64,000 nt of DNA from Scyliorhinus canicula (GCF_902713615.1 NW_024055728.1:4995367-5059366), one strand, 5' to 3'. Numbered from the stretch's first letter, positions 13,851-64,000 are shown. Notes: generated by a model from the letters alone, not told the origin. Numbers and translations: made by a program.

Positions 13851-16800
13851 CTGCTCGGTGTTTTACACTGAACAAGGATAAGCTTATTTGATGAATCAAC
13901 TCATTATTTGCGAAATGTAATTGTGCCGAATGACAACAGAAACTGACATTAACACGGTTCTGTGCCACATCCGGCTGGAATGGACTACATATACAGTAAT
14001 CATTTATCGTCACAATTATGAAGTTAATGTGAAAAGCCATTCGTCGCCACATTCCGGCGCTTGTTCGGGTAAGCTGGTATGGGAATTGAACCAGCGCTGC
14101 TGGCCTTATTCTGCATTGCTAACTAGCTATCTAACCCACTGAGATAAACCAGCCCCTTACATGAAATGAATTGAAATGAAATGGAAATCGCTTATTGTTA
14201 CAAGTAGGCTTCAAATGAAGTTACTGTGAGAAGCCCCCAGTCGCCACATTCCGGCGCATGTTCGTGGAGGCTGGTACGGGAATTCCCTGCAAACGACATG
14301 GTATGGGAATCCCCTGCACCCTCTCGCTTGCCCATTGCTGCCACATGGAACTCGGCTGTGGGACGCATCAAAGGCTTATCTCACCCAGAGTAGAGGCATC
14401 ACCACCAGAAATTGTCAGCGTTGAAAGATCAGCAGCAGCGAGATCGAGAAGTAAGTGTCGGCGCCTGGAGTCAACAGTTTCTGCCTCAATGTCATCATCA
14501 ACGTCTGTAAGCGAACAGAGAAGAGAATGGTAATTTTCACTGCAGCTAATTATACTTCTTGAATAATCAGGATGATTCCCTAGAATGGTAATCCACCAAC
14601 AAAGAGAAAGGCAGAGAGTGGACTATTTTGGTCTGCAGGATCAGTGAGTTTATCGATTGGAAAATCATTGTGCCACGTCAACTTTGCATTTTTATTTTGT
14701 GGTTTATTGTCACTGGATTCCAACGAATGACGGTAACATTTTGAGAGGTGGTGGCAGAGCGGTGTCATAGAATAGAATTTACAGTGCAGAATGAGGCCAT
14801 TCGGCACCTTACCTAAGGTCAACACCTCCACCCTATCCCCATAACCCAGTAACCCCACCCAAAACTAAGGGCAATTTTGGTCACTAAGGGTTATTTATCA
14901 TGTCCAATCCACCTAACTGCATATCGTTGGACTGTGGGAGGAAACCGGTGCACCCAGAGGAAACCGACGCACACACGGGGAGGAGGTGCAAACTCCACAC
15001 ACACAGAGACCCACGGCGGAATCAAACCTGGGACCCTGGAGCTGTGAAGCGATTGTGCTCTCCACAATGCTACCGTGTCACAACACAAATAGTTCTCTAG
15101 AACCCCAGGGTCATCGGTACATACCCGTTTTCGATCACCCGATGGCACAGAGTGAAATTTGAATTAAATAAATAATAGAAATTTAATGTCCAATGTGTAT
15201 TAAATAATCTGCTTCATTCCTGCCCCCTGTCCCATGAGGGAGAGCAATCAGCCACCTTGATCTGCTTTGCCGCACATGTGAATCTAGATTTAAATAATTC
15301 CGTTTAATCATGAATTCCCGCTAAAATTGTCAGGGCAGGCCCGTTCGGGATGGACAATAACATATGGTCGGGTCAGGGATAAATGAATGCAAGTCAAATA
15401 AATATCTGCGCCCACATTTCACTTCTCACTTCCTGGGGGAAAACTACATGAATGGAATGTTTTATATCTCTGTACAACATTCAGCGATCTCTATGAAGTT
15501 CATTTCGTCATAAAGTATGTTTGCCGATTTGCTTAAGTTAAATTAAAAACTTCTCCAGGATGTGGATCATTGCTCTTTGCGATATTTACATTCTTATTCT
15601 GGATTGAAAGTGTGAACATATCAACTAGAAATTGAGAATCCACCCATCGTGAACACTAGCCGATTGCCAGTTACCGTTTTCTGATTCAGAATCCGTGTCA
15701 CCCAAACTGTGACTGGTGTAATATTCGATCTGATTCAGGGAGTCAATGGAAGCAGAATCTGTTGAAGACAAAGGACAATGGATTATAATTGTATATATAG
15801 ATCACCTGGAAACACTTTAGTGGAAAACAACACAGATACATTGTGTTCCTTGGAGGAGAGATAACAATCATTTCACAGTGCCCATATAATTCCCTGGTGT
15901 TTGTGAATAAACAAGATGTTGGGAACAGTCACAGTGGGCAATTCAGTGAGAAGAGGAAGATTCAGCAGCATCAGATCAGGACAACCGGAGATAAACAATA
16001 CATTTAGCTGCAATCCTGTAATAGGCAGGATAACACATAGTGCATCCCAATTAGTAATGTAGTGTATTGTGTAACAGAAAAATATATATAATTTCAAATA
16101 TAACCCATTATTACAATATCCGTTTGCAGGCTTTCATTCTCCAGAATCATATCCTGACCCCAACGATCTCCCTCACTTTTATTTTAGAGCACTTAAATGG
16201 TGACTGGGGAAAGAATTATCTCCGGTAAAATCAGAAGAATTTTTTCTTCTCACGTCAGTTATTCTGGAATGCGCCCGTGGAGCATCTTTGCAATTGGTTT
16301 GCACAAGCCCCTGTTAGTTTTTATTTGAATTTGATAACATTCAGACCAGAACCGTAGCCAAATCTCCAAATGCTACCTAACAGATATTGTTTGGTGGTTC
16401 TGCTTAACGTCTTTAAATCACAATCACATCAATCTCGAAATAAATGCTTACGTTTGTTTTAATTTTGATGGTGTCGTTATCTGTACCTATATATTTAGTG
16501 TTTAGTATATTTGTACACCGAAATCACTTTGTTCAACAATCCAATTAGATTTCTCTCCAGCATTATGTAACATCCAGATTATTATTGCCAAGATGTAAAT
16601 CATTCAAAGTACGTATGTCGACATGCATTTGGTAATTGTACGTGAAGACTGCAAGTGTTTCATGTTGCATCAACAAGGTGTGTGTTGTTCACTGGTTTAG
16701 ATACATCAGGAAGCCATTGGGCTGAGGAAATGCAAATAAGAACAAACGCTCAGGTCGCTATTTACTAAGAAGTGGAACACAAAACACCCTTGCAGCAAAA

Positions 16801-19800
16801 ATGGGCAGAAACAATCTTCACCAATTCCATTGTTCTTCTCGTTGTGTACAGAACACTGAAATGACGCTGTTGCATACGAGCACTTTCAATGGTGTTACAA
16901 TTAAACAGTAACTTGTCCGGTGTATAGTGCATTTAAAATTGAAAATGCAAACCTGATGCACGGGTATGGATTGACTCCTTTCCAGGAGGGATATTGTCAA
17001 TTTCTTCATAAATTGCCGGTTCCAAAGCTACTGGTGAAACCCAGTCGCCAGTTACGACACCTGGTGGAATGAAAACGGAGCGTTTCATTTGTTGCATTGC
17101 ACCGCCTTTAGTATTTGTGAATGAAAATAAAGAAAGTTTCAAAGCGACGATAATCAAGAGACCAAAACAGTTAACTTGAATGTGATGGTATGTTATTACA
17201 TAATTTTATCCTGCGTGTCTGAGACATGGAGATACAACGAGTTGGAGAGTTCGCGAGCAAGGGAGAGAGAAAGGGAGATACATTTCGTGTCTCGGCGAGT
17301 GAACCAGTGACTGCCTGTGGGTGTCTGAGATTGAGTGCCGGTGCGAGTTACTGTTTTGTGTGAGTGGGAGAGCGAGCGAGAGCGGGAGAGAAAGATAGAC
17401 TGGCGTCGATGTCTCTGCAAGTGTGTGAGTGAGCACATATGTTTGTGAGGGAGCGACTGGCGATGTTTATGTCTATGTGCCTATTCGACAGAGAGCAGAA
17501 GAGAAAACAAGACACGAAGAGCGTGTGTGTATGTCCATCTGTGCAAGTAAGTCAGTGCGTGTGTGTGGGTGTACGTGAGTGTGCGTGTGAGTGTGTGTGC
17601 GTGTCTTTATGTGAGTGTAACTGTATATGTTGCTATTTTTGTCATCGTGCGAGAGGGAAAAAGAGATAACCTGTTCCCGAGTGTCNNNNNNNNNNNNNNN
17701 NNNNNNNNNNNNNNNNNNNNNNNNNNNNNNNNNNNNNNNNNNNNNNNNNNNNNNNNNNNNNNNNNNNNNNNNNNNNNNNNNNNNNNNNNNNNNNNNNNNN
17801 NNNNNNNNNNNNNNNNNNNNNNNNNNNNNNNNNNNNNNNNNNNNNNNNNNNNNNNNNNNNNNNNNNNNNNNNNNNNNNNNNNNNNNNNNNNNNNNNNNNN
17901 NNNNNNNNNNNNNNNNNNNNNNNNNNNNNNNNNNNNNNNNNNNNNNNNNNNNNNNNNNNNNNNNNNNNNNNNNNNNNNNNNNNNNNNNNNNNNNNNNNNN
18001 NNNNNNNNNNNNNNNNNNNNNNNNNNNNNNNNNNNNNNNNNNNNNNNNNNNNNNNNNNNNNNNNNNNNNNNNNNNNNNNNNNNNNNNNNNNNNNNNNNNN
18101 NNNNNNNNNNNNNNNNNNNNNNNNNNNNNNNNNNNNNNNAGGGAGACAGCGTTTCTGAGCGTTTCTCTGTGTGTGAATGAACAGGTTTGAGGAAATAATA
18201 CGATAATGTGTAACGAAGTAAATCTATGACTGCTTGTATATGTCTATGTGAGACAGTGTGAATTTCAGAGATAATATGTGCGTGTTGAAACGAGTATGTG
18301 TGACTTATTGTATGTGTGGAAGAGGGAATGAGTATGTTTTGGTGTGTGATAGAGTGTGAGTGAGAGGTAGTGTGCATGGGTATTTGTTGGTGTGTGTATA
18401 TGCACATGAGCAAATTAGTGAGACAGCGTGTACGTGAGTGAGTCATTTCATAAGTGCATGAGAGTGAGTGCGAGCGTGTGTATTTGTGTTTGTTTTCAGG
18501 AGAGATGAGTTATGGACGTGTGTGCAAGTGAAACTGCATGTGTGAAAACAGTCTCTGTGTGTAAGAGGCCGGGTGAGTGTGCTTGTAGCAGTGTCTGTAT
18601 GCGTGTGAGCGAGCATGAGGGACAAATATATAGATTTGGAGAGAGACCATTTGTACCATTAGACATGAATGAGTTAGTGAGTGTGTGCATGTGTGTATAT
18701 TCGTGCATGTGTGTGAATGCGTACATGAGTGAGTATATAACCAGGGGCTGGTTCAGCTCACTCAGCTAAATCGCTGGCTTTTAAAGCAGACCAAGCAGGC
18801 CAGCAGCACGGTTCGATTTCCGTACCAGCCTCCCCGGACAGGCGCCGGAATGTGGCGACTTGGGGCTTTTCACAGTAACTTCATTGAAGCCTACTCGTGA
18901 CAATAAGCGATTTTCATCTCGTTTTTGATATAGGGTACATGGGTGTGCGTACATGCGCACATATGTCTGTATATGCATACATGCATGTATATGTGGTACA
19001 TGTATGTGTATATGCATACATGTGTCTGTGTGTATGCGTACATATGTGTGTGTATAGGCGGACATGAGCGTGGAGATCTCTAACTGTGCAGGTCGTTTTT
19101 TGTACCATTGTATGAGAGAGATGTGTTCTGAATCTGTACATATTTATCTGAATCCAAAGAGATGACATATAAGTTAAAATGACTTAATTTAATATTCGGG
19201 AAAGATCGATTGGTTCTGATTGACATGGGAATATATTGGAAGAGACATTGACATAAACCGTGATTGATCGCTGACGACAGCATCAGGTGGGAAACACGAT
19301 TGAGGTGGTGATGTTGCCGAAAGTGACACATCTGCGTGAGAACAAATTTGTCCTTTACTTCGAACGGCAGGTTGTTGATGTTTGGGATATTAGTGCAATA
19401 ATTGCGTTAGGATGCGGAATAATCATTGACTAATTCAGCAAATTACAAATAATTGCCATATTGCAGATATAGTACATAGACATAGAACATAGAGCGCAGA
19501 AGGAAACCATTCAGCACATCGAGTCTGCACCGCCCACTTAAGCCCTCACACACCCTCCCCCCGTAACCTGGTAACCCCTCCTAACCTTTTTCAGTCAATA
19601 AGGGCTAGTTGTCATTGCCAATTCACCGCACCCGGACGTCTTTGGACTGTGGAAGGAAACCGGATGACCTGGAGGAAACCCACGCAGACACGGGGAGAAC
19701 GTGCAGACTCCGCACAGACAGTGACCCAGCGGGGAATCTAACCTGGAACCCTGGCGCTGTGAAGCCACAGTGCTAATCACTTGTGCTACCGTGGTGTTGA

Positions 19801-22800
19801 TGGATTCCGGTCAGGGAGCTCGAGGTTAGCAACCTTACCGACAACCTGCACTAGTGGAACGGATACACACGTATAAATGACCTAATTGAATAAAGGAAGA
19901 AGAGTGATTAGAATCGGATCACAGGAGCCAGAACGGTTTACTGAAATTTTCTGATCCAAGGCAGGAGCATCTTATGTACGGGCAGATTAACTGCGAACTA
20001 GAATTTGCACATTTAGGCAACTGAGTCGACTACTGACGTGAACAAAACCAATGAACAAAACCAGATTAAGATTTTAAATCAGCTTCAAACAAGGAGAAGT
20101 GACAGTCTTTTCAAATGGCCAATGAACTAAAGGTTGGTCTGTATATGAATCAATATGCGAGATCCAATATGAATGCACCAGGATAACTGCGACCTCACCT
20201 TTTCTATTTGACTTCTTCCGCATTACCAGCTGCAGTGCGATCAACTCACAGATTAACAGGACTCCCAGGGTAATGCAGATCACTACCGGGGTGTAAGTGG
20301 TTTCTGCTTCCTGTCCTTAATGAAAGGTTAGAAGACGATTTAACACAGGGACGCCAACTGATATTCTTAATGTTTCTAAAGATCTGAAGCCACACATATA
20401 ATCTTAAGAAATTATCAACAACAAGAAAACATCAACAAGAAAAAATCAATACTAGTAGGATGCTAACGCAAATACGAAGGATATGTGTTCGTAATAAGTA
20501 CCTGCAGCTGTGGGAGGAGATCTCTGCGGTAATTCTGGCCATGAGGAATGTATTATGCAAAAGTAATGGACAACACGTTATGAATTTCCTTGAAATAAAA
20601 CATGCGTTTTATTTTTCCGAAGAGTTATATCAAACACCACAAATTCCAAGCCTCCCGTTCCGCAACAACGCCCACCATCCCTTGTGCCGTACCCTTACCA
20701 GAACAAATCACACTAGCATCTTCCTTGTGATGACAATCAGGTTGATTTGCGGCTGAGGATGGACAGTCAGAGAGGATGGATTCGCTTCCGGTGCACCTCA
20801 CCTCATCGAGCCAGACAGCACCGTCACCCGTGCCGAACGCGGCCCCACCCGGAGCCTGTAGAGCCAGGCCACAATCCAGCTGCCTGCAGACAACATCAGC
20901 ATCGGCCATATCCCAGGAGTCATCACATACAGTGTCCCAGGTGTTATTACACAATATCTCCACTCTCCCGGAACACCTGGTGTTACCTCCAACCAGCCGC
21001 ACCTTCAGCCCGGAACCTGGTAAAGAGATCAGTTATTATTGTCCACATAATAAAAGCCAGGAATACAATTCAAACGAAGTAGATAAAATACAAAATTCCA
21101 AATACCTGTTTGATCAGTGCATTGCCGTGAACTGTGGGGCTCCGTCTCTATCACACTGGATTCTGTTGCGAAAAGAAACATGATGATTCTATTACATACC
21201 AATGTTTACAATGACATCCGAACATCGATCAATGTCTTTCCTGACCTGCTCAGAACTCTGGCAACACCAGGTTGTAGCCCAACAGGTTTATTTGGAATCA
21301 CTTGTTTTCGGAGCGCAGCTACTTCATCAGGGAAGTCATCATCTCTCCCTGATGAAGGAGCTGCGCTCCGAGAGCTAGTGATTTCAAATTGGACTTTAAC
21401 CAGGTGTTGCAAGACTTCGTACTGTTTCCAGTCCAGTCCCAGGCCGGTACTTTCACATAATTTTCTTACCTGAACAGACAACACTTGCATCTTCTCGGTG
21501 ATAACAGTTGTGTTGCCCCCAGGGGTTTGACTGACACTGCCATAGTGTTGACTCATGTGAACCACAGTCTATCTCATCGAGCCAAATCGGACCGGATCCT
21601 TCACCGAATGAGCGAGCGTCATAGTTAATGGACATGTGGGGACCGCACTGTAACTGTTTGCAGATCACTTCAGCATCGCGCTTATCCACATTGTCAGAAC
21701 ACAATGTTCCCCAGATCCCATTGTAAAATATTTCCACTCTCCCCTCACAGCGATGCTTTCCATTCACCAGCCGAAGCTCTTTGTGCTCTATCAATTAAAC
21801 ACACACACACACATGGAGTTAGATTGACTGGTGAATGTTGAACCTACATTGAGTCACACTATACGAATTGCAGTCGTTGTGTTCAGCATTTGCTTTCATT
21901 ACTTCATATCGGTAACAGCAAATGAGCTGAAATTTAATTATACAATCAAGAATGATCGGCACGAATCCCCTCAGCAAACCTTTGCACGACCTCCCGCCGT
22001 TGATCATTTGAAAACTTTGCAGGATGGTTAGCCGGGGAATGCAGCGAAGCTCGGCAGGATGATTATCAACATGATTTCGACCAGGCTCGACACTCTGACT
22101 TATCAATAGAACTTGTTGAAAAATGTTTACAAAACAATGGTAACTTCGGCGAGCAAAATATTGGACCTGGATTGTCCCTGTGGTCGCCGAAAGTGTACAT
22201 TGACATCGAACATTTGGACCATCAATCGGAAAAATTATGTCAAGCTGTAACTGAGGAAACTGAGATGTGTATTCAATGCACAAATGCACAAAATACACAA
22301 AAAACAATAATACACACCAAAGGCCAGGTCAATTGTGAATTTTTGTGGAGCTGTTAAAGATGCTTCATACTCATTGGAAAATAACAGTCGACATTTCGCA
22401 GAGAAAATGCATGTTGTTATACAGAGGGATCTATAGCCCCCCCCCCCTCCGCCCAATTAGTGGAGTTAAATCTATGTTAAGTATGAAAACATTTTGCGCA
22501 CTGCCCAGAGAACCCGATCAAATTAGTACTTGGAATGGGTAACCTTTGTGGAGAATGGTGCCGATGTATTTGAGGAGAACTTAGAACAGTACATAGGAGA
22601 GACAATGAGGAGTTTAAGGAAACATCGAGAGGGGTTTATTAAGTAATATTTTGGGGACAGAGGTGTGCACATGGGATGATCCAAATTGCCAGTTTATCTT
22701 CTCTTTGTTCTTACTTTCTCTCTATCTCTCGCACTCTAATTCACTAAAATATCTTCTGTTCGAATTTTCACTGGGCACTGAAGAATATTCAACTACTGAG

Positions 22801-24408
22801 ATCACATTTACCTGAGCACATGACCTTCACATCTTCTTTATGACTGCAGTCATGACTTCCCCGTGATGCTTTGGGACAATCCCAGAGGAAAGATTCGTTC
22901 CCGAAGCAATCCAGCTCATTCAGCCAAATTGGCCCAGTGCCTGGTCCACAAGAAGCAGGAAGTGTCAGCTGCAATGCATCTCCACAACCCAACTGTTTGC
23001 AAACCAGTCGAGCGGCGGTTAAATCCCAGGAATCATCACAAACTGAGCCCCATTTCTTATTGTAATAAACCTCAACACGGCCAGCACATGGGCTTCCACC
23101 GTCAGCAAGCCTTAGCTGCTTGTGTTCTGATAGAAAGAAATACAGTAAAACATGTTATTCCTCATGTGTATTTCATCATTCAATTTGAACGATATGATGT
23201 GCAGCTCAACTATTTCTGATCCGCCTCTGACATTCGAATAGATAGATTACACAGACCATCGATCTATACTTACCGAAAAGAAAGATTGCTGAATATACAG
23301 ACATTTATAATGCTCCTCCACCTGTCCTCGGCGATGGTCTGTTTCCCACTTTGCCTCTGTGGGCTAAATTCATTTGTTTTTAATATAAATTTGCAATACC
23401 CAATTCATTTTTTTCCAATTAAGTAGCAATTTAGCATGTCCAATCCGCCTGCCCTGCATATATTTGGGTTGTGGGGGCGAAACCCACACAAACAAGGGAA
23501 CAATGGGCAAACTCCACAGGAACAGTGACCTCGAGCCGGGGACGGCGTCGTGAGGCAGTAGTGCGAACCCACTGCTCCACCGTGCTGCCTTGTGGGCTGC
23601 ATTCTGGTTGTACAGTTTTACCAGCAACTGCATGTGTTCTTATTAATCACGCCACTTACACTCTTTTGATTTAACAACTTCCAATGTTCCTTTTTGCTGC
23701 GCATTTCTGTCACGTGAACTTCACGTGATCTCTCCACTCAGTAGTTCACATTGGGAAAAATCAGAAATTTCTCAAAATATACAGCATCTGTGAAGAGATC
23801 ACCGGAGTTGAACTTTCAGGCCGTGACCTTCTCTAGAAACTCAACCCATCTACTGCTGAGATGTTCATCAGAGCCTTAATGTTATGTACTGGGGGATCGT
23901 GAAAGCTCGGTAAAAGGAGAGAGTATTTACACTTAGTGGAGAATATAGAACTACGTGGATATTTTAAATTAAGTGTAATCCACGTATCTAACTGAAGTTC
24001 ACGAGTCGTTGGGAATTTCTATCTGTAAAGAAGCGGAGTGTTTGTATTTTTATGACAGAGATAGATTCTATCTTGATAAACAAGGAGGTGAAATGGTATC
24101 TGAACGAGGCAGGAGGCAGCTATAAGACCATTATTGATCTTATTAAATATCAGCGCGGACTCGATGGACCGGGTTGCCGACTCCTCCTAATTGGTCTGTT
24201 TCCATGTTGACTGATATTCCGCTGTACAGTGCAGTGGAGGGGGAATGGACGGGAGGGGGGGGGGGAGTGATGGCGATATCGAGGGTAGTAGAGGCAACGA
24301 GAGCAAATAAGTGAGAGGCGGGGAGAGATACAAAGATCGAAGAGAGAGAGCGAGAAATAGAGAAAGCGAGAGAGAGCGAGAGAGCGACCGAGAGGGAGAG
24401 AGGGTGAA

Positions 24409-24440
<32 letters not shown>

Positions 24441-27400
24441 CGAGATGCATGGCATTAAGGGTAAGTTAGTAGCATGGATAGAGGATTGGTTAATTAATAG
24501 ATAGCAAAAAGTGAGGATTAATGGCTGTTTCTCTGGTTGGCAATTAGTAGCTAGTGATGTCCCTCAGGGATCCGTGTTGGGCCCACAATTGTTCACAATT
24601 TACATAAATGATTTGGAGTTGGGGACCAAGGGCAATGTGTCCAAGTTTGCAGATGACACTAAGATGAGTGGTGAAGCGAAAAGTGCAGTGGATACTGGAA
24701 GTCTGGAGAGGGATTTGCATAGGTTAAGTGAATGGGCTAGGGGCTGGCAGATGGAATACAATGTTGACAAATACGAGGTTATCCATTTTGGTAGGATTAA
24801 CAGCAAACTGGATTATTATTTAAACGATAAAATATTAAAGCATGCCGCTGTGCAGAGAGACCTGGGTGTGATAGTGCATGAGTCACAGAAAGTTGGTTTA
24901 CGGGTACAACAGCTGATTAAGAAGGCAAATTGAATTTTGTCCTTCATTGCTAGAGGGATGGAGTTTAACACTAGGGAGGTTTTGTTGCAATTGTATAAGG
25001 TGTTAGTGAGGCCACACCTGGAGTATTGTGTTCAGTTTTGGTCTCCTTACTTGAGAAAGGACATACTGGCACTGGAGGGTGTGCAGAAGAGATTCACTAG
25101 GTTAATCCTAAAGCTGAAGGGGTTGGATTATGAGGAGAGGTTGAGTAGACTGGGACTGTACTCGTTGGAATTTAGAAAGATGAGGGGGGATCTAATAGAA
25201 ACATTTAAAATTATGAAGGGAAGAGATATGATAGATGCGGGCAGGTTGTTTCCACTGGCGGGTGAAAGCAGAACTAGGGGACATAGCCTCAGAATAAGGG
25301 GAAGTATATTTAGGACTGAGTTTAGTAGGAACTTCTTCACCCAAAGGGTTGTGAATCTATGGAATTCCTTGGCCAGTGTAGCAGTTGAGGCTCCTTCATT
25401 AAATGTTTTTAAGATAAAGATAGATAGTGTTTTGAAGAATTTATGGATTAAGGGTTATGGTGTTCGGGCCGGAAAGTGGAGCTGAGTCCACAAAAGATGA
25501 GCCATGATCTAACTGAATGGCGGAGCAGGCTCGAGGGGTAGGATGGCCTACTCCTGCTCCTAGTTCNNNNNNNNNNNNNNNNNNNNNNNNNNNNNNNNNN
25601 NNNNNNNNNNNNNNNNNNNNNNNNNNNNNNNNNNNNNNNNNNNNNNNNNNNNNNNNNNNNNNNNNNNNNNNNNNNNNNNNNNNNNNNNNNNNNNNNNNNN
25701 NNNNNNNNNNNNNNNNNNNNNNNNNNNNNNNNNNNNNNNNNNTAGAGAGAGAAAGAGGGGGAGGGAGAGAGGGAGAGCGGGAGGGCGAAGAGAGAGAGAT
25801 AAAGAAGGAAGAGAGAGGGAGAGAGCGAGACAGGGGGTGGGGGAGAGAGAGAGATAAAGAGAGCGAGAGATAGAGAGAGCAATCGAGAGAGAGCGAGAGA
25901 GAGAGTGGGGGAGAGAGGAAGAGAGAGAGAGAGAGAGAAGAGAGAGGGAGCGAAAGTGAGAAAAAGAGAGGGAGAGAGCCGATGAGAACGAGCGCGCATC
26001 AGAGAGAGCGAGATAGATAGTGAGAGTGAGAGAGATAGAAGGGGATGAGAGATTCTGAATTGGACATTCTGAATTCTCCCTCTGTGCACTCGAACAGGCC
26101 CGGAATGTGGAGACTAGGGGCTTTTCACAGTAACTACATTGCAGTGTTAATGAAAGCCTACTTGCGATAATAATTAAGATTTTCATTATTTTTATTATCA
26201 TCATCCATAATATTCGTTTTATGCATCACAACTTGCTTCCTGCATAATTTGTGGGCACGATTTAGACGATTGATCAAAATATTTGAATCCCCTCCTTAAC
26301 GATCATCTCCTTCCCACGCTCAATCACAATGATTTTCCTCATCCTCTGACGAAGACATGAGTCACAGTAACAAGTCGCAATTTTTGGATAAATCTTAATT
26401 TAATTTCTGATTATGTAATTGATCCATGCGTTGCTAAAGGCGCAACAGCATTTACTGCTCTGTTTGCTGTTCATTTACTGCTGTCTCCTCATATTCTGCA
26501 AACATATTCCACTGTTAATGAGCGTGAGTAAGGACCACAGTTAACCCTTGACGCTTGGGGACCCCACTTCGGAAATGCCCCCTCATTTTTCCGTAAGAGT
26601 TAATTTATTACCTGAACACATGACTCCGACGCCGATGCTGTTATTGAGAATCGGTTTCCGCTCAAATGAGCTGCAGTTCCAGAGATGTGATTCATTTCCT
26701 CTACATTGGACATTATACACCCACACAGGACCTTCACTCTCGCCGTACTTTGAAGCATTATAAGCGGCTATCGCGCGGCCGCACTCCAGCTGTCGACAGA
26801 CAACTTTGGCATCATCCATGTCCCAGAGGCTGTCCTGGACTCTGCCCCAACTGTGGTTGTAGTAAATCTCCACTCGCCCCTCACACCGGTTTCCCCCATT
26901 CATCAATCTCAGTGACAACATTGTGTCTACAGGATTAAATAAAATGTGTTAAAGGTCAGCAACTTTATCCATTTGTTGTCACTCCTGACCTGGGCGGAAT
27001 TTTTAACTTAATGTCTTTTCTTGGCAACAGCCAAGCAAAATCGCGCCACTTTGAAAATTCTTGCTCCGTGTCTGGAACAAGTTGAATGATTGAAATGATC
27101 CCTGGGATTGTGTTTAATGCACCTGGGAACAATCTAGCAAGCAGTATGTCAGCAGCAGCGGCAGCCTCATTAATCCCAGAATGACTGGGGAGCATAAAAG
27201 GGGGGAGAACAGTTGCTTTCGAGATGGTGATGGAGGGAAGACAGACAGCCCTACGACACTGGAGCAGTTTGGCGAGCTAGGGACCAATTGCAGCTGGGAT
27301 GTCATTGCAGATGAACAGAGCAGAGACAGATATTTTGATTAATTTGCTTTCGAATTAAGTAGGCTTCAACGAATGTCGCAAGGAATTGGGGAGCGGCAGG

Positions 27401-31000: not shown

Positions 31001-34000
31001 GTTTCCTTATTTAATGCAGCAAGCGGATTAGATCTGGAAGGAACATTGCAGGGAGGTGATGGATAAGGATCAATCGTGTTTCCTAGAAGCTAATTTGACG
31101 AATGATGGGAGAGAAACTGGCTTGTCCAGTGGGCGAATGCGGGAGGAGTGACTGGTTGAGTTACTTTTGCTGAACAGCGGAATGGACCGTGTGAAACGCG
31201 CGCCTTCTTCCTGTGCTGCGTCAACATCCCTTTATTCTCAGTCTGGAGAGATTCAGCGAACTCACCCGAGCAGACCACATGGACGTCATTCTGGTGTGAG
31301 CAGTTAAATTGTTCCGCGGATGAAAGCGGACACTCCCACAACCGGGATTCATTCCCGCGGCACCTGTAGTTCTCCTTCCAGATAGGACCGGTTCCCTTTC
31401 CAAACAGAGCGTATCTCGGGATGTCCTTCACCGCCCCGCACTGCAGATGCTCACAGATCACACTGGCGGCTTCTAAACCAAAGTGAACATCACACAGCGT
31501 CCCCCATTGCTCTCCATGCAGTACTTCCACCCGACCGGAGCATCTGTCCTCACCACCAACCAATCGAGGTCCATGGTTCCCTGTTTGGATCAAAATAGAA
31601 AGACACAAATAACTGGATATCTGATCATTAGAAGTAGATGGTGAAATGTCGAGATGGCCATAGGTTGATCCCATTATTTGCCCCAGGATTCTGTCGACTA
31701 CGTGCCCGGTTGCGGAAATTTGATCGATCTTCCTTTGCTGGTGGGGGGTGGGGGGGGGGGGGGGGATGGAATAGGACCTCAATCCTAAAGGGCCTTCAAT
31801 AACAATGCAAGGAGATGGTGATTCGGTCACTAGAGTTTTGGTCAGAAACCATCGCCATCCCACTGGCTACTTCCAGGAATAATCTATTGGCCTTGGAATG
31901 CTTTACGGAAATAAATCATATCTGACATTAATAAATATATTATTCTACCAGAATTATAAAACTGTCTTGCAGAATTTCTATCAGGTAGATTCATTCAGTT
32001 TAGATGTGTAAAATGTTAAATTAATTCGCTGATAGGCAGCATGGTGGCGCCTTGGTTAGCATTGCTGCCTCACGGTGCGGAGGTCCCAGGTTCGATCTCG
32101 GCTCTAGGTCACTGTCCGTGTGGAATTTGCACATTCTCCCCGTGTCTTCGTGTGTTTCACCCCCAGAACCCAAATATGTGCAGGCTAGGTGGATTGGCCA
32201 CGCTTAATAGCCCCTTAATCTCGAGACGTCGCATTTATGCTTCATCCCGCTTGTTCTTGAGAAAGTAATTGAAAATGTCACGATTGAACGACTGCTCTCC
32301 ACATGGACAAGGTACATTTGCAATCTATGGGAGCGTCTCTAATTGGGTAATGTGTAGGTACTCTAATTGGCAGGATGTGACTCGTGGTTTACTGCAGGGA
32401 TCTATATTGGGGCCAATTCTTAACAATATTCATCAGTAACGTGGATAGCACAGAACTACATATATCCAAATTTGCTGGTGATACAAAGTCAGATGGCATT
32501 GTCGACATGGCAGATGATAGCAGATATTGGCAGACGACGCAAATGGGCAAAATTGTGACAGGTGGAATTCAATGTCTTCAAGTGTGAGGTTATCCATTTT
32601 GGACCAGAAAAGCATCTGACAGATTACTTTCTAAATGGAAAGACGTCGACGTCCAAAACTTTGGAAATACAAGTGCAGAGATCATTCATACACCACGAAC
32701 AAGTGCAAAATATTATTAGCAAGGCTAACGGAATGCTCGAAGACTGGCGTGTAAATACATTTCGGTTATGCTGCAGCTGCATCAAACCCTAGTTCGACCC
32801 ATTTGGAGTACTGGCAGCATCAGAGGAATGGCCATTTAGCCTTGGAGGGAGGGAGGCATAGGTTTACAAAACATATATCTGGACGACAGGGGTGAATTTA
32901 GGACGAGGTTTTAAGAAAATTAGGTATTTTCCGTTAGAATTTAGAAGGTCAAGGGCTCATCGGATCAAAGTATTCCAGATATTGAGGGCAAAACACGGTA
33001 AATAAAGGTAAACAATTTCCACTGGTTGCGGATTCCAAAAGTAGGGGGCATTGTTGCAAAATTAGGAGTGGACGGTTCAGGAGAAATGTTAGGAAGCTCT
33101 TCTTTACTCATATCGTTGTAGAGGTTTCGAACTCTATCCCACAAACACATTTGTATCCAGAACAGTTGTAAGTTTTAAATATGAGATAGATATATTTCCC
33201 TTGAGCAAATTTATTTGGGGATATGGCCAAAGGCAGGTACGCGGAGTTAGGTCACAGATCAGCCCTTAACTTATTACATGGCGGGACAGGCTCAAGAGAC
33301 TGAATGGCCTAGCCCTGATCCTATGACAATTGCAAATTGCTACTCCTGTAGCTGACTTTCGCCAATAAAGTCCTTCTCTAAAATAAGAACTGTTATTAAC
33401 GAAGCAGTTTGTGTTGTTTATCTGCACTTGTAGTTCGTGACGTGACACTTGTTAGTGACATAAAGCAAGACTGGTTAGTTTTTAAGCCAGGCTTCTGTCG
33501 AATGTGAAAGCGAAACCCGTTTACACCGCAGCCAGTAAACACATTAGCAGCACATCTGTCCTTTTGCAGAACAAAAGCTGAAATTTTCAAATTTGTAATT
33601 TTTAAATACACGGGAATAAGATTAAAGTGAGTCCAAAACAGTCAACATCTGGGAACTGTCAGGTCACGTTTCGATATGGACACTTTCGAGAGAATAAGTG
33701 AATACTTGTTTCTTTCAGTTTTCGAAATATTAGCGGAAATTCTCTGTTTCTCAGTGGGTTTCTACTCACCGGAACAGATCACACTGATATCGTTCATGTG
33801 GCTGCAACCCTGGTGATTTACTGCAGACAGAGGGCAGTCATTTAGGTTTGTCTCTTTCCTTTACAATCGAAGCTGTCCTTCCGTATAAGCCCAGAACCCT
33901 CGCCAAAATATGCGCCTCCTGGCATGCGTACTGCGACTCCACAGTGCCGGTGAGCACAGACCACATTAGCGTCATTCCAATCCCAGTGACGATCACACAC

Positions 34001-37000
34001 TGTTTCCCAGGTTGCACCATTACTGATCTCCAGTCTCCCCGAGCAAAAGTTGTGTCCCGATTCAAGTCGAGGAATTAAGTGGGCTGACAAACAATATATC
34101 AATCGAATTATAGTGATTAGTATATTAATACAAGTCTGATGTATTATAATCAATCATGTTTATTGCTCAAGCTACTTCAATTCTTATCCAATACCTTATG
34201 TGACCTTCAGCCTCGAATGTTATTGTTTATCCAGTGAGTTCACGCTTCTGATATTTGCGTTATTTGTTGTAAACTCAGATATTTGGCTTCGGTTTATTTT
34301 TATACAAGCGCTATGTCACAAGTGAGAACTCGGTGAATTGTCGACTAGAAGATGCGGATGAAATTATTCCACTCTACCTCTGATTTTCTAGCTGCCACGT
34401 TACCTTCAACAACTGCCCGCCCCATCCATGTTCTCCTCCAGAAAACAGATGCAGGCAAGGGGTCGCAGGAAACTCCCTCACCCATCCTTCATTTAAGGAG
34501 GCGGCACAGTAGCCCAGTGGTAGCACTGTGGCTCCTCAGCTCCAGGGTGCCATGTCCGTTTCCGAACTTGGGTAACTGTACGGAGTCTGTGCGGAGTCTG
34601 CACGTTCTCCCCGTGTCTGCGTGGATTTCCTCCGGTTTCCTCCCACAAGTCCCGAAAGATGAATTGGACATTCTTAATTCTCCCTCTGTGTACCCGAACT
34701 ATCGCCGGAATGTGGCGACTAGGGACGTTTCACAGTACATTAAATGCAGTGTTAATGTGAGCCTGTTTATAGATTTTCGTCGAATTTACAGTGCAGAAGG
34801 AGCTCATTCAGCCCTTCGAGTCTGCACCGACTCTTCGAAAGAGAACCCGACCCAGGTTCCACACCTTCACCCTATCCCCACAACCCAGTAACCCCACCCA
34901 ACAGTAAGGGCACTTTTGGACACTAAGGGCAATTTATCATTGCCAATCCTCCTAACCTGCACATCTTTGGACTGTGGGAGGAAACCGGAGCGCCCGGAGA
35001 ATACCCACGCACACACGGGGAGGATGTGCGGACTCCACACAGACAGTGACCCAAGCTTGAAGCGAACCTGTGAGCCTGGAGCTGTGAAGCAATTGTGCTA
35101 ACCACAATGCTACTGTGCGGCCTCCTTGTGACAATAAAGAATTCTGCTGTCACTAAAGAATACAAAGAATACTGTCCGAACACATTGTCTCCCCCACGAT
35201 TAACCCACCTCATCACAGTATTTGACTTTAAGTCAATGCTACACATTTATTTTGAATAATCAGGGAAATAAATATATTTCCATCCTCTTTTACAATGTTC
35301 AGGCCCTTGAGAAAACTAACCCCTATCGCAGTGTGGGAAGAGGCAATTCTAACATTTCCTTACCGGAACACATAATCTTGACATCTTCATGATGCCCACA
35401 GTCATGTTCTCCCCAGGGGTCTGAGGAACAATTCCAGAGAAATGGTTCGTCACCAGAGCACTGCACCTCATCCAACCAAATTGGTCCCGATCCTGGTCCA
35501 GAAGAAACATGGGACGCATCCATTGCATTTCCACAACCGAGTTGCCGACAAACCACTCCTGTGTCAACATTGCCCCATTCGTCATTACAAACTGTGCCCC
35601 ACTGTCCACGATAAAATATCTCCAATCGTCCAGCACAGCGGCTTCCACCTTCGGACAGTCTTAACTGAAGATTTTCTGTCAGAGAACGCAACAGGATTAT
35701 ACGTTTCACAAACGGTAAATGCTTCAGTCAATATCAGCTTAACCATCCAGAAAAAATAAAAATTATGTATCACGTCCACGAATGGGTATGAAGCTGCATC
35801 CCCAGCATCTGCCTACACGAACCTATTGCTTAGAAATGGTTCTCTGTCTCGGCTGATCTATATTGTTCTGATGTCCAAAATGGGCCTCTTGCCACACCAC
35901 GTCGCTTACATTCACTGACTACAAGCAAATCCACCCATTCCTCCAGTTTTCACTGTAATCTATTATCTTCAGAAACACCTGCTGTCGCCCAGTCCATTTC
36001 GGAAAATTTGGGGGCAAATACAGTTTTGCAGAATTTAGTATTGTTTCAATAAATCTTTCTCTCATGTTGATGGCAGTTGAATTTAGGTCACTGCTCGAGC
36101 AGAAACATTATCTTCTTTTTAAATTCCAATCAATCAAACAGTTGTCCAGAAGAAGGAGTTCTGCAAATTACGCCCCACTCGATTATTGACCGAAAAATAA
36201 AACATTTTTTTCAGATGCTGCGGACTGTTATACGCGTTCAATTCCTCGAGATTCGATCTACATCGTGTTTCGGCCTGTCTCTGTGTATGGAAACATTATA
36301 TAACATGAAATTCTCTAAAGAGATCCAATCAATTGTGTGGGTTTAGTGAACTTAATCTCTCTAGTACTTAATAAAATTCCTCGAGTAGTGAACACTGTAA
36401 GAAGTCTTACAACACCAGATTAAAGTCCAACAGCTTTGTTTCAAACGCGAGCTCAGGTCCTGGGAAAGGAGAAGTGCATCGAAAGGTTTTGTTCGAAACA
36501 AACCTGTTGGGTTTTAACCTGGTGTTGTAAGAGTTCTAACTGTGCTCACCCCAGTCCAACGCCTGGCATCGCCAAATCGAGTAGTGAACAACTGTTAACT
36601 GTTGCATATTTCTGAAGTAATTGACTGAAGCCTACATATTAGTGATTTGTGTATCTGAGCCATTAGAACATGCTGCGCATTTCTATCTGTCCTTCCTAAA
36701 GGGCTCATAGATTGTCTGCTTGAAACGTTGCATTCCCTCTGATGAGTTATCTTCGTTTCGGATATTGGAGCGGAATCCTGATTATGTGAAGCACTGAGGA
36801 TGACATGTGCAATCTAAGGATGACATATACAATGTGGGAATGGTATGTCCAATCTGAAGATGACATGTACAATGTGAGGATGACATGTACAATCTGAAGA
36901 TGACATGTACAATGTGAGGATGACATGTACAATCTGAAGATTACATGTACAATGTGAGGATGACATGTACAATCTGAAGATGACATGTACAATCTGAAGA

Positions 37001-57900: not shown

Positions 57901-60900
57901 CTATCTCTGATCCAGAAAGTCAAGGAAGGGCTGCCACCGCCGGAAGAACCCCTGTACCGACCCTCTCAGGGCGAATTTGATTCTTTCCAATTGGATGAAG
58001 CTTGCCATGTCGTTTAACCAGGTGTTAACACTTGGTGGCCTTGTGTCCCTCCACTGAATCAAGATCCTTCTCCGAGCTACCAAGGACGCAAAGGCCAATA
58101 TTCCGGCCTCCCTTGCCTCCTGTACTCCTGGCTCCACCCCAACCCCAAAAATCGCTAGCCCCCACCCTGGTTTGACCCTGGTTCCCACCACTCTCGATAC
58201 CGTCCCCGCCACCCCCTCCCAGAACTCTTCCAGTGCCGGGCACATCCAGAACATATGTACATGGTTCGCAGGGCTTCCCGAACACCTAACACACCTGTCC
58301 TCACCCCCGAAGAACCGACTCATCCTAGTCCCCGTCATATGGGCTCTGTGCAGCACCTTAAATTGGATGAGGCCCAACCTTGCGCACGACGACGACGAAT
58401 TGACCCTCTCTAAGGCATCCGCCCATGTCCCATCTTCTATCTGCTCTCCCAGCTCCGCTTCCCACTTGTCTTTCAGCTCCTCTATCGATACCTCCTCCAC
58501 CTCCTGCATTATTTTGTAGATGTCCGAGACCTTCCCTTCTCCGACCCAGACCCCTGACAGCACCCTATCACTCACCCCTCTATCGGGAAGCAAGGGAAAT
58601 CCTTCCACCTGTCGTCTGGCAAATGCCTTCACCTGCAGGTATCTAAACGTGTTCCCCGGGGGGAGCTCAAATTTCTCCTCCAGCTCTCCCAGGCTCGCAA
58701 ACCTCCCCTCTATGAACATGTCCCTCAGTTGCCTGATGCCCGCCCTGTGCCAGCTCTGGAATCCCCCGCCAGTGTTCCCCGGGACAAATCTGTGGTTCCC
58801 TCTCAGTGCCGCCGCCATCAGACCCCCCACTTCCCCCCTGTGTCGCCTCCACTGCCCCCAGATTTTAAGGGTGGCCGCCACTACCGGACTCGTGGTATAC
58901 CTTGTGGGGGGGAGCGGCCATGGTGCCGTTACTAGCGCCCCCAGGCTTGTATTGCCGCAGGACGCCCTCTCCATACGTTTCCAAGCTGCCCCCTCCCCCT
59001 CCATCACCCACTTGCGCACCATCGATGCGTTCGCCGCCCAGTAGTATCCGGAAAGATTGGGTAGCGCTAATCCTCCACTGTCCCTACTCCGTTCCAAGAA
59101 AATCCTTCTCACTCTAGGGGTGCCATGTGCCCACACATAGCCCATAATGCTGCTAGTTACCTTCTTGAAGAAGGCCCTGGGGAGAAAGATGGGCAAGCAC
59201 TGGAACAGAAACAAGAACCTCGGGAGGACCGTCATTTTGACTGACTGCACCCTCCCTGCTAGCGACAGCGGTACCATGTCCCACCTCTTGAACTCCTCCT
59301 CCATCTGCTCCACCAGCCTTGAAAAGTTCAGCTTGTGGAGGGTCCCCCAGTTCCTTGCCACCTGCACCCCCAAGTACCTGAAGCTCTTTACTGCTCTCTT
59401 AAAGGGGAGCCGCCCAATTCCCTCCCCCTGATCTCCTGGGTGTATCACAAAGACCTCACTTTTACCCACATTTAATTTATATCCCGAAAAGTCCCCAAAC
59501 TCCGCTAGTATTTCCATTACCTCCGGCATTCCCCCTTCCGGGTCCGCCACATATAACAACAAATCATCCGCATAGAGTGATACCCGATGTTCCTCCCCTC
59601 CCCTTGTCAGTCCTCTCCACCCCCCTGAACCCCTCAGTGCCATCGCCAACGGTTCGATCGCTAATGCAAATAGTAAGGGGGATAGGGGGCATCCCTGCCT
59701 GGTACCTCGATGGAGCCCAAAATACTCTGACCTCCTCCCGTTTGTAACCACACTCGCCATCGGGGCCGAATACAGCAGCTTCACCCACTTGATAAATCCC
59801 TCCCCAAACCCAAACCGTTCCAGCGTCTCCCACAGGTATTCCCACTCCACCCTATCGAATGCCTTCTCCGCATCCAGTGCTACCACTATCTCAGCCTCCC
59901 CCTCCACTGCTGGCATCATAATCACATTCAACAGTCTCCGGACATTTGTGTTAAGTTGTCGTCCCTTTACGAACCCCGTCTGGTCCTCATGGATTACCCC
60001 TGGCACACAATCCTCTATTCTGGTTGCCAGGACCTTTGCCAACAGTTTGGCATCTACATTCAAGAGGGAGATAGGCCTGTAGGACCCGCACTGTACAGGG
60101 TCTTTGTCCCGCTTCAGGATCAAGGAGATCAGGGCCTGTGACATTGTCGGGGGCAGAACCCCCCCCTCTCGCGCCTCATTGAAGGCTCGCACCAGCACTG
60201 GACCCACCAAGTCCACATACTTCTTATAAAATTCCACCGGGAACCCATCCGGCCCCGGCGCCTTCCCCGCCTGCATCTGGCCAATCCCTTTAACTAGCTC
60301 CTGCAGCTCTATCGGCGCCCCCAGCCCCTCCACCCGTTCCTCCTGGACCTTTGGGAACCTCAATCTATCGAGGAAGTTCTCCATTCCCCCCCTCCTCCTG
60401 GGCGGCTCGGACCGGTACAATTCCCTGTAGAAATCCCTGAAGACCCCGTTCACCTCTTGCCCCTTCTGCACTACGTTCCCTCCCTTCTCTCTCACTCCCC
60501 CAATCTCTCTGGCTGCATCTCGCTTGCGCAGCTGGTGTGCTAGCATCCTGCTCGCCTTTTCCCCGTACTCATAGACCACGCCCTGTGCCCTTCTCCATTG
60601 CGTCTCCGCCTTCCTAGTGGTCAGTAGGTCAAACTGGGCCTGTAAACTGCGCCGCTCCCTCAACAGCCCCTCCTCTGGTGTCTCCGCATATCTCCTGTCC
60701 ACTTCTATAAGTTCCCCCACCAGTCTCTCCCTCTCCTGCCTCTCCTTCCTTTCTCTGTGTGCCCTTATGGAGATCAGCTCTCCTCTGAACACTGCTTTCA
60801 GGGCCTCCCAGACTACCCCCACCTTCACCTCGCCCGTGTCGTTCGTGCCCAGATATCTCTCAATGCCCTTCCGGACCCTTCCGCACACCTCATCGTCCGC

Positions 60901-61700
60901 CAGCAGCCCCACATCCAGGCGCCACAACGGGCGCTGGTCCCGTGCTTCCCCCAGTTCTACCTCTACCCAGTGTGGTGCATGGTCCGAAATCGCAATGGCC
61001 GAGTACTCCGTGTCCTGCACTCTCGAAATCAGCCCCCTGCTCAGTACAAAAAAGTCTATTCTGGAGTACACCCTGTGGACGTGGGAGAAAAAAGAATACT
61101 CCCTCGCCCTTGGCCTGCCAAATCTCCAAGGGTCTACCCCCCCCCCCCCATCTGCTCCATGAACCCCCTTAGCACCTCTGCCGCTGCCGGCCTCCTATTC
61201 GTCCTGGAACTCGATCTGTCCAGCCCAGGGTCGAGCACTGTATTGAAGTCCCCCCCCATGATCAGGCCCCCTGCCTCCAGACCCGGAATGAGGCCCAACA
61301 GGCGCCTCATAAAACCCGCGTCATCCCAATTCGGGGCATACACATTCACCAGCACCACATTCTCTCCCTGCAGCCTACCCTTCACCATCACGTACCTACC
61401 CTCCTTATCTGCTACCACCTGCGCCGCCACGAACGACACCCTCTTTCCCACCAAAATCGCCACCCCCCGGTTCTTTGCGTCCAAGCCTGAGTGGAACACC
61501 TGTCCCACCCACCCCCTTCTCAGGCGTACCTGGTCTACTACTCTCAAGTGAGTCTCCTGCAACATTGCCACATCCGCCTGCAGTCCCTTTAGGTGTGAAA
61601 AAACCCTTGATCTCTTGACCGGCCCATTCAGCCCCCTCACGTTCCAAGTAATCAACCGGGTCGCGGAGCGACCCGTCCCTTTCCCCTGTCTATTAGCCAT
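57901..61700 (-). CDS. L1 ORF2p (APE endonuclease, reverse transcriptase, Cys-rich C-terminus), one frameshift at the G13 run 61137-61149
   Basis: ITWNVRGLN, LQETH, NVYAPN, GGDFN, SRIDFF, SDH, PGPDG, YRPISLLN, LDAEKAFD, GTRQGCPLSP, YADD, YLG and CxRC...H...C motifs. Confidence 0.95.
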
Positions 61701-63598: not shown

Positions 63599-64000
63599 AT
63601 GTGCGACTTAGCTGGTCATAGCCGCAACCGGAAGTCACCATCAGCCTATCCTGAGAGGAAATGATGTTTTACACTGAAATAGAAATGAGTCCTCGCTCTG
63701 GCACGCAGTTTAATGAGTCAGTTCAGCACAGCAGGAGGCTTGTGGACTCGTTTGCCCTCATTTCAAAGTTGTTTCTGAATTTGATTTAGTGAACGTTGCT
63801 TTAACTCAGAATGCGTTCGACGTCTTCAAATATATGTCCAATAGCCTTAAAATAGATGCCATGGATCCCCCCAGCGCATCCCTACCAACCTTGCCACACG
63901 CCCGCCCCCGACGAAAGAGACCCCCCCCCCCCAACCCCCTCCACCCACCCCCACCCCCACTACAACATCAACTTCCACCAACCGCCCAGACACCCCATGC

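What the first reader, a model, noticed from the sequence alone, without database searches (positions are those of the whole stretch)
20199..20315. Acidic residue in the TM helix of an SRCR receptor
Seen: the TM reads [22 protein letters not shown], with a Glu, a Gln five residues later and two Cys. Established: activating immune receptors normally carry a basic TM residue that pairs with acidic residues of adaptors (CD3, zeta, FcR-gamma, DAP12, DAP10). Here the ligand-binding chain has the adaptor-type acidic residue and its own tyrosine tail. Inference: it may assemble in the membrane with a basic-TM partner such as a TCR or NK-type receptor, or homo-oligomerise. That would be a receptor-plus-adaptor module I do not know from mammalian WC1/CD163.
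Basis: partly seen in the sequence, partly recalled or inferred. Interest (0 to 1): 0.75.

Follow-up and report, generated by a model that had tools for sequence, protein, structure and literature searches.

The report
Conserved acidic residue in shark WC1-like receptor membrane helix
Sharks and rays have kept a buried acidic residue in the membrane helix of their WC1/SCART-type immune receptors, which the bony-vertebrate versions lack, and this suggests the receptor docks to another protein inside the membrane.

Summary
Window 20315-20199 (minus strand) is a phase-1 exon encoding the transmembrane (TM) helix [22 protein letters not shown]. The Glu is residue 14 of 22, inside the hydrophobic core and inside the AlphaFold helix.

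The gene is a WC1/SCART-type group-B SRCR receptor with seven SRCR exons, one of them frameshifted. It also has a stalk exon, the TM exon and three tail exons. Its tail carries the WC1 signature Y-E-E-I.

29 of 31 homologous proteins from 14 shark and ray species (8 orders) have Glu or Asp at this position; the exceptions have Ala and Val. None of 109 aligned TM copies from bony vertebrates is acidic there (Val/Leu/Ala), although the helix is clearly homologous. Those include sheep, goat and bison WC1, birds, turtles, coelacanth, gar and teleosts.

The Gln is not conserved. The first Cys is pan-vertebrate and the second is elasmobranch-specific.

So the carboxylate is lineage-specific and selectively maintained. 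Its function is inferred only: most likely an intramembrane polar contact, either with a basic-TM partner or with itself. No partner was identified, there is no DxxxT motif and no ITAM, and a homodimer prediction gave no verdict. I found no paper describing this. Chimaeras were not sampled. The scan had noted this stretch and the gene before, on this same window.

The parts
35364..35675 (-). SRCR exon a (312 nt, phase 1-1)
   Evidence: Local HMM hit E 9e-50; splice sites; 70.5% identical by tblastn (75% by blastp on the exon peptide) to residues 27-131 of Mustelus P0022
33770..34083 (-). SRCR exon a' (314 nt), frameshifted: one base short in a purine run near 33857-33851
   Evidence: The HMM hit is split over two frames. 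tblastn to P0022 131-241 is also split over two frames. Sequence read.
31266..31580 (-). SRCR exon b
26612..26926 (-). SRCR exon c, a degenerate type lacking the WG.VCD cysteine (WGRVQD); the same type occurs in other sharks
   Evidence: Pfam SRCR E 1.5e-27
22812..23126 (-). SRCR exon d
21470..21787 (-). SRCR exon e
   Evidence: acceptor read
20699..21016 (-). SRCR exon f, membrane-proximal
   Evidence: Pfam SRCR E 1e-32
20502..20534 (-). Predicted 33-nt stalk exon encoding [11 protein letters not shown] (phase 1-1)
   Evidence: AG/GT sites read. Matches ELPQTPSSTPAG of P0022 at the same place. Keeps the reading frame in the assembled model. No RNA evidence.
20199..20315 (-). TM exon: juxtamembrane [11 protein letters not shown] helix [22 protein letters not shown], stop-transfer RKKSNRK. 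The Glu codon GAG lies about 20247-20245.
16953..17105 (-). Tail exon T1 with [14 protein letters not shown] (WC1-type Y-E-E-I motif)
   Evidence: Sequence; tblastn to P0019, P0022 and P0025 tails; motif defined in PMC2906472
15675..15758 (-). Tail exon T2 ([27 protein letters not shown])
   Evidence: also matched by blastn to the Heptranchias locus L001
14369..14504 (-). Tail exon T3, terminal ([13 protein letters not shown]...TLGEISL, then stop). The Tyr of the distal YDD[VI] motif has been replaced.

Best explanation
The exon encodes the TM helix of an elasmobranch member of the WC1/SCART (CD163c-alpha) branch of group-B SRCR receptors. These are type I chains with tandem SRCR domains and a tail that signals through a Src-kinase-type Y-E-E-I motif. 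In sharks and rays this otherwise pan-vertebrate helix acquired a carboxylate (Glu, sometimes Asp) 8 residues above its cytoplasmic end. Selection has kept it there. My reading is that the buried carboxylate is an intramembrane polar contact that holds the receptor against another TM helix. The version I favour (about 0.35) is docking to a Lys or Arg in the helix of a partner receptor chain. The SRCR chain would then supply both a pattern-recognition ectodomain and a tyrosine tail to that partner, much as WC1 must be brought together with the gamma-delta TCR in cattle. Self-association through Glu-Glu hydrogen bonds is the next most likely version (about 0.25). What is shown: gene structure, family membership, position of the Glu in the helix, and its lineage-specific conservation. 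What is inferred: any binding.
For: 1. Position. High hydropathy and an AlphaFold helix over residues 7-36 put the Glu in the hydrophobic core.
2. Conservation. Glu or Asp is present in 29 of 31 homologous proteins from 14 elasmobranch species in 8 orders, including the rays Mobula and Pristis. In a MAFFT alignment of TM copies the column reads E25 D5 A1 in elasmobranchs. In bony vertebrates it reads V49 L36 A21 I1 S1 F1.
3. Substitution pattern. Glu-to-Asp exchange is tolerated while hydrophobic replacement is rare. This is what is expected if the carboxylate itself matters.
4. Codon level. GAG is invariant in five intact genes from four species although synonymous divergence of the exon is 0.4-0.8, and neighbouring Leu codons vary synonymously. 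The one copy with Lys instead (AAG) sits in a neighbouring paralogue that has lost its splice acceptor and YEEI exon, and so is a pseudogene.
5. Homology. The helix and tail are homologous to WC1. A Heptranchias TM plus tail aligns with sheep WC1.1 at E 2e-07, with Glu opposite Val, YEEI opposite YEEL, and YDDVE shared.
6. Background. Conserved acidic TM residues in single-pass immune chains are, in the cases reviewed, assembly sites for basic residues of partner chains (PMC13107469; PMC1440944).
Against: No partner was identified. The window holds no other receptor gene. There is no hydroxyl residue one turn below the acid: the helix reads E-L-I-A-L, unlike the DxxxT motif of CD3 and DAP12. 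The known assemblies need two acids per basic residue, so a dimer would be required, and none is shown. The chain has its own signalling tail and does not obviously need a partner. Two apparently intact paralogues do without the acid (Ala in Mustelus P0022, the closest colinear relative of this gene, and Val in Heterodontus P0014). The homodimer prediction scored 0.08, which is no verdict. One SRCR exon is frameshifted.
Confidence: 0.6

Rival explanations
1. Homotypic association. The protonated Glu forms hydrogen bonds between helices of two or more copies of the same or paralogous SRCR chains. This would give preformed dimers or oligomers whose YEEI tails are cross-phosphorylated on ligand binding. 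No basic partner is involved.
For: From general knowledge of model TM peptides, a single Glu, Gln, Asp or Asn can drive TM helix self-association. Small residues flank the Glu on the same side (Cys13, Ala17). A Cys near the outer end of the helix is conserved in nearly all vertebrate family members and could link chains. The family lies in tandem arrays, so paralogues are probably co-expressed: two SRCR genes are adjacent in L002, and several proteins share one scaffold.
Against: The homodimer prediction did not reach the mark, which counts as no verdict rather than evidence against. Nothing shows that WC1-family chains dimerise through the membrane. Bony-vertebrate homologues function without the acid.
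Confidence: 0.25
2. A role other than assembly. The buried acid could tune trafficking or ER quality control. It could set helix depth or tilt and so the exposure of the juxtamembrane tail. Or it could bind a lipid or cation. None of these needs a specific protein partner.
For: Unpaired polar TM residues are known retention and degradation signals for unassembled receptor chains (PMC13107469). Bony-vertebrate homologues carry a conserved Gln seven residues lower on the same helix face (Q71 of 109). So a polar residue in the inner half of this helix may be a general feature whose exact chemistry is flexible.
Against: The strict preference for a carboxylate (Glu or Asp, never Gln, Asn or Ser in 32 chains) argues for a charge-specific or acid-specific interaction.
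Confidence: 0.12
3. A neutral lineage marker. A substitution fixed in the elasmobranch ancestor persists by descent and gene conversion within a tandem family, without function.
For: Two intact-looking paralogues have Ala or Val. Tandem families homogenise by gene conversion. TGT GAG is identical at nucleotide level in all five genes read.
Against: From general knowledge, a charged residue in a membrane core is costly, and the crown elasmobranch split is about 270-300 million years old. The acid is retained across both sharks and rays, synonymous sites in the exon are near saturation (pS 0.4-0.8), and neighbouring codons vary. The only Glu-to-Lys copy seen is a pseudogene.
Confidence: 0.05

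Closest known systems
WC1 (T19) and SCART1/SCART2 (CD163c-alpha), the gamma-delta T-cell co-receptor branch of the CD163 family of group-B SRCR receptors
   Same: One SRCR domain per phase-1 exon. Separate stalk or interdomain, TM and several tail exons. The TM core is homologous (C-I-x-L-G-x-L-L...L...L). The tail has Y-(Q/E)-(D/C/E)-(I/L) about 25-35 residues after the membrane, and in most sharks a distal YDD[VI]. The genes form tandem multigene arrays.
   Different: Sheep, goat and bison WC1, and all 109 bony-vertebrate TM copies sampled, have Val, Leu or Ala where elasmobranchs have Glu or Asp. Bony vertebrates instead have a conserved Gln seven residues lower. The cell type expressing the shark genes is unknown.
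Signalling modules of activating immune receptors (CD3 gamma/delta/epsilon, zeta, FcR-gamma, DAP10, DAP12, CD79A)
   Same: Single-pass chains with a conserved Asp or Glu in the membrane core and tyrosine motifs in the tail. CD3 and CD79 also have folded ectodomains. A Cys lies toward the outer end of the helix.
   Different: No DxxxT motif. No ITAM or YxxM: YEEI and the next Tyr are about 28 residues apart. The ectodomain is large, with 6-7 ligand-binding-type domains. Dimer formation is not shown. There is no sequence homology.
CD5 and CD6, group-B SRCR co-receptors that associate with the TCR complex
   Same: SRCR ectodomain, type I topology, tyrosine-phosphorylated tail, and functional coupling to an antigen receptor.
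   Different: Not compared by sequence here. Their coupling is not known (to me) to rest on a TM charge.

Membership tests
CD163/WC1/SCART family (group-B SRCR transmembrane receptors) | Tandem group-B SRCR domains, each encoded by one exon | tested here: met
   Seven SRCR exons of 312-318 nt, all phase 1-1. Pfam PF00530 at E 1e-32 and 1.5e-27.
CD163/WC1/SCART family (group-B SRCR transmembrane receptors) | Type I topology with a single TM helix homologous to that of WC1/SCART | tested here: met
   The TM aligns column by column with 109 bony-vertebrate WC1/SCART-like TM copies; Leu17, Gly18, Leu21, Leu25 and Leu28 are shared. Shark TM plus tail against sheep WC1.1 gives E 2e-07.
WC1/SCART (CD163c-alpha) branch | Cytoplasmic Y-(Q/E)-(D/C/E)-(I/L) motif (Herzig et al. 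2010) | tested here: met
   AIYEEIDNI in exon T1. The motif definition was read in PMC2906472.
WC1/SCART (CD163c-alpha) branch | Membrane-proximal d'/e-type SRCR domains by domain phylogeny | not tested
   No domain tree was built against the typed mammalian domains.
WC1/SCART (CD163c-alpha) branch | [quoted passage not shown] | not testable with these tools
Runs X9, X27, X28 and X11 hold 0.2-0.4 of the words of 20199-21016, close to the exon share, which hints at a transcript. Their type is not on record.
Acidic-TM signalling adaptors (CD3, zeta, FcR-gamma, DAP10/12) | Asp or Glu in the TM core | tested here: met
Acidic-TM signalling adaptors (CD3, zeta, FcR-gamma, DAP10/12) | Hydroxyl residue one turn below the acid (DxxxT) | tested here: not met
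   The sequence is E-L-I-A-L, and the +4 column is Leu in 29 of 31 elasmobranch rows. The motif is described in PMC13107469.
Acidic-TM signalling adaptors (CD3, zeta, FcR-gamma, DAP10/12) | ITAM (YxxL/I x6-8 YxxL/I) or YxxM in the tail | tested here: not met
   The assembled tail has YEEI, then EYYTS about 28 residues later, and no YxxM.
Acidic-TM signalling adaptors (CD3, zeta, FcR-gamma, DAP10/12) | Dimer that presents two acids to one basic residue | tested here: inconclusive
   A conserved outer Cys lies 10 residues above the Glu. The homodimer prediction gave no verdict.

The most novel reading that the evidence does not exclude
Elasmobranch WC1/SCART-like receptors work as 'adaptors with a sensor ectodomain'. 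Paired Glu residues of a receptor dimer would clamp a Lys or Arg in the TM helix of a separate receptor chain, for example a shark TCR, NAR-TCR or NK-type receptor. That would hard-wire a pattern-recognition SRCR array and a YEEI tail into that receptor complex. Such an assembly mode has not been described for any SRCR receptor and is absent from bony vertebrates.
Probability: 0.25. Interest if true: 0.85.

Novelty: new variant of a known kind. Interest (0 to 1): 0.6.

Why it matters
In cattle, WC1 has to be brought together with the gamma-delta TCR to work. How SRCR co-receptors are coupled to antigen receptors is not settled. Here the oldest living jawed-vertebrate lineage with such receptors shows a clear sequence signature of intramembrane coupling that bony vertebrates lack.

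If the Glu docks a basic-TM partner, it would show that the charge-pair rule for immune-receptor assembly was recruited independently by an SRCR family. It would also point to a specific, findable partner in sharks. If the Glu drives self-association, it would be a natural counterpart of the engineered and oncogenic TM Glu dimers.

Either way the claim is cheaply testable with point mutants. The family-wide contrast (30 of 32 acidic against 0 of 109) gives a ready set of natural controls, including two intact-looking shark paralogues without the acid.

Tried and rejected
Splice junctions, tail exons and expression therefore rest on homology and splice-site reading only.
- Complex prediction, two copies of the 38-residue TM exon: score 0.08 against a mark of 0.32, controls not run. 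This is no verdict and is not evidence either way.
- A phmmer search with the TM exon also returned a saposin-repeat protein (P0002, E 2e-4), which I dismissed as chance.
- I considered the Lys-bearing TM exon next to the Chiloscyllium gene (L004 5216-5332) as a natural basic partner. I rejected it because the exon has lost its AG acceptor, no YEEI exon follows, and a stop follows the T2-like exon. It is a pseudogene.
- Paper searches for shark, elasmobranch or cartilaginous-fish WC1/SCART/SRCR receptors found nothing relevant.
- The WC1 gene papers do not mention a charged TM residue.
- The look-up of encoding contigs gave no DNA for Mustelus, Heterodontus or Hemiscyllium loci, and no record for the S. 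canicula protein.
- A bacterial promoter/terminator scan run by mistake downstream of the stop is meaningless here.

Full report
**What is at the coordinates**

On the minus strand, window 20315-20199 is a 117-nt exon with an AG acceptor and a G|gtgag donor, both in phase 1. It encodes (G)[38 protein letters not shown](G). The 22 hydrophobic residues have mean Kyte-Doolittle hydropathy of 2.5-2.7. Their summed Hessa free energy (scale values recalled from memory) is near -0.8 kcal/mol even with Glu and Gln included.

AlphaFold2, run on the exon with an alignment of 26 relatives, gives one continuous helix over residues 7-36, with pLDDT 95-96 across residues 11-30. The Glu is residue 23 of that peptide. 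It is therefore in the membrane core, 8 residues above the R-K-K stop-transfer signal.

**The gene**

A local HMM built from the obvious SRCR frames finds seven SRCR exons on the minus strand between 35.7 kb and 20.7 kb and none elsewhere in the window.
- Six are intact phase 1-1 exons of 312-318 nt. Pfam SRCR hits reach E 1e-32.
- The seventh (a', 34083-33770) is 314 nt. Its frame shifts in a purine run near 33857-33851. This is either a real one-base deletion or an assembly indel. Because the exon is symmetric, skipping it would keep the frame.

Between the last SRCR exon and the TM exon lies a 33-nt phase 1-1 exon (20534-20502) encoding [11 protein letters not shown]. It matches ELPQTPSSTPAG at the same place in a Mustelus protein.

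Three tail exons lie downstream of the TM exon:
- T1 (17105-16953) carries [14 protein letters not shown].
- T2 (15758-15675) carries [16 protein letters not shown].
- T3 (14504-14369) is terminal.

All three were found by homology and have consistent phase-1 splice sites. Joined together, the exons read through in frame to a stop. An assembly gap (17686-18139) lies between the TM exon and T1 and could hide a small exon. Four runs of one study hold 0.2-0.4 of the sampled words of 20199-21016, close to the exon share of that stretch, which hints at a transcript.

**Family**

A phmmer search of 1.84 billion representatives with the 38-residue exon returned three shark SRCR proteins. Region-limited searches from those proteins gave 47 mostly elasmobranch relatives. 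A search from a Polypterus 'antigen WC1.1-like' protein gave 120 bony-vertebrate relatives, including sheep WC1.1 and goat and bison WC1.

The TM plus tail of a Heptranchias protein aligns with sheep WC1.1 at E 2e-07. The TM cores are collinear, YEEI lies opposite YEEL, and YDDVE is shared. Herzig et al. (PMC2906472) define Y-(Q/E)-(D/C/E)-(I/L) as the shared tail motif of WC1 and CD163c-alpha/SCART, and its phosphorylation is required for WC1 co-receptor function. The window gene has YEEI, so it belongs to the WC1/SCART branch of the CD163 family.

A Heptranchias locus (L001) is collinear with the window, with 72-84% nucleotide identity across the matched exons. No database protein is identical to the window's exons; the best are 72-80% identical. 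I did not verify that.

**The conservation test**

I extracted the TM segments of all retrieved proteins and aligned them.

| Group | Sample | Residue at the window's Glu column |
|---|---|---|
| Elasmobranchs | 31 proteins with a family TM, from 14 species in 8 orders (carpet, cow, saw, bullhead, mackerel and ground sharks; Mobula; Pristis) | 26 Glu, 3 Asp, 1 Ala (Mustelus P0022), 1 Val (Heterodontus P0014) |
| Bony vertebrates | 109 TM copies from 103 proteins | V49 L36 A21 I1 S1 F1; none acidic |

No bony-vertebrate row has Asp or Glu anywhere in the helix core. The rest of the helix is clearly the same helix in both groups, with shared Cys14, Leu17, Gly18, Leu21, Leu25 and Leu28 (exon-peptide numbering counted from the leading Gly, i.e. 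one search's; one more than, where the Glu is residue 23).

The window's Gln is not conserved: the column reads L18 M7 Q2, and the other Gln is in Mobula. The first Cys is nearly universal in vertebrates. The second is common only in elasmobranchs (22 of 31). Bony vertebrates have their own conserved polar residue, a Gln seven positions lower and so on the same face of the helix (Q71 of 109).

At DNA level, five intact TM exons from four species all keep TGT GAG. Synonymous divergence of the exon is 0.4-0.8, and the adjacent Leu codon varies among TTG, CTG, CTC and TTA. The only copy with a different charge (AAG, Lys) is in a neighbouring Chiloscyllium paralogue. That copy has lost its splice acceptor and its YEEI exon, so it is a pseudogene.

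**What this means**

The acid arose in or before the common ancestor of sharks and rays and has been maintained by selection in a multigene family. Tandem organisation is seen directly in Pristis. It is also implied by several proteins per species sharing one scaffold. Tolerance of Asp, with near-absence of anything else, points to the carboxylate itself being needed.

In the single-pass immune chains reviewed in PMC13107469 and PMC1440944, conserved membrane-core acids are contact points for basic residues of partner chains, two acids per base. That is the best precedent and the reason I favour hetero-assembly. The analogy is incomplete in four ways:
- There is no hydroxyl residue one turn below the acid.
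- There is no ITAM.
- A dimer is not shown.
- The chain already has its own signalling tail.

Self-association through the protonated Glu is a serious rival. A role in trafficking or helix positioning cannot be excluded. Neutral persistence is unlikely. The homodimer prediction gave no verdict.

**Novelty**

I found no paper on elasmobranch WC1/SCART-like receptors or on a charged TM residue in this family. The gene family is known. The lineage-specific conserved TM carboxylate is a new variant feature with a testable implication.

**Limits**
- Chimaeras, CD163 proper, CD5 and CD6 were not sampled.
- Counts include paralogues and are not phylogenetically independent.
- Several database models are partial or chimeric; Rhincodon P0001, for example, strings three gene tails together.
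- Expression and splicing of this copy are unconfirmed.

Noticed in passing
window 33770-34083 (minus): SRCR exon a' is 314 nt, one base short of its siblings. The frame shifts in a purine run near 33857-33851. This is either a real frameshift or an assembly indel, and because the exon is symmetric, skipping it would keep the frame.
   Followed up: partly
L004 5216-5332 (Chiloscyllium plagiosum): The TM exon of a neighbouring paralogue has Lys (AAG) where the family has Glu (GAG). Its AG acceptor has mutated, no YEEI exon follows, and a stop follows the T2-like exon, so it looks like a decaying pseudogene.
   Followed up: yes
L001 14023-14133 (Heptranchias perlo, protein P0004): The TM helix has Arg (CGA) in place of the conserved Gly (GGA), six residues before the Glu. 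A second Heptranchias gene (P0025) keeps Gly.
   Followed up: no
alignment of TM copies: Bony-vertebrate WC1/SCART helices have a conserved Gln seven residues below the elasmobranch Glu column, on the same helix face (71 of 109 copies).
   Followed up: partly
window 14369-14504 (minus): The distal YDD[VI] tail motif has lost its Tyr here (DVDDDIE) and in Mustelus P0022 (LDDDVE). Other sharks, Polypterus and sheep WC1.1 keep it.
   Followed up: partly
window 26612-26926 (minus): SRCR domain c lacks the canonical WG.VCD cysteine (it reads WGRVQD) and has a divergent C-terminal third. The same degenerate type is conserved in bamboo-shark P0006, so it is a domain type and not decay.
   Followed up: partly
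window about 17200-19200, around the gap 17686-18139: CA-rich simple repeats, which read as long His/Thr frames, flank the assembly gap.
   Followed up: no
window 62645-63607 (minus); 58000-64000: A 321-codon open frame with a coiled-coil-like, basic sequence resembles a LINE ORF1. It sits in a GC-rich (0.54-0.60) block.
   Followed up: no
protein P0001 (Rhincodon typus, 757 aa): This database model contains three TM-plus-tail units interleaved with SRCR domains. It is a chimeric prediction across tandem gene copies.
   Followed up: partly
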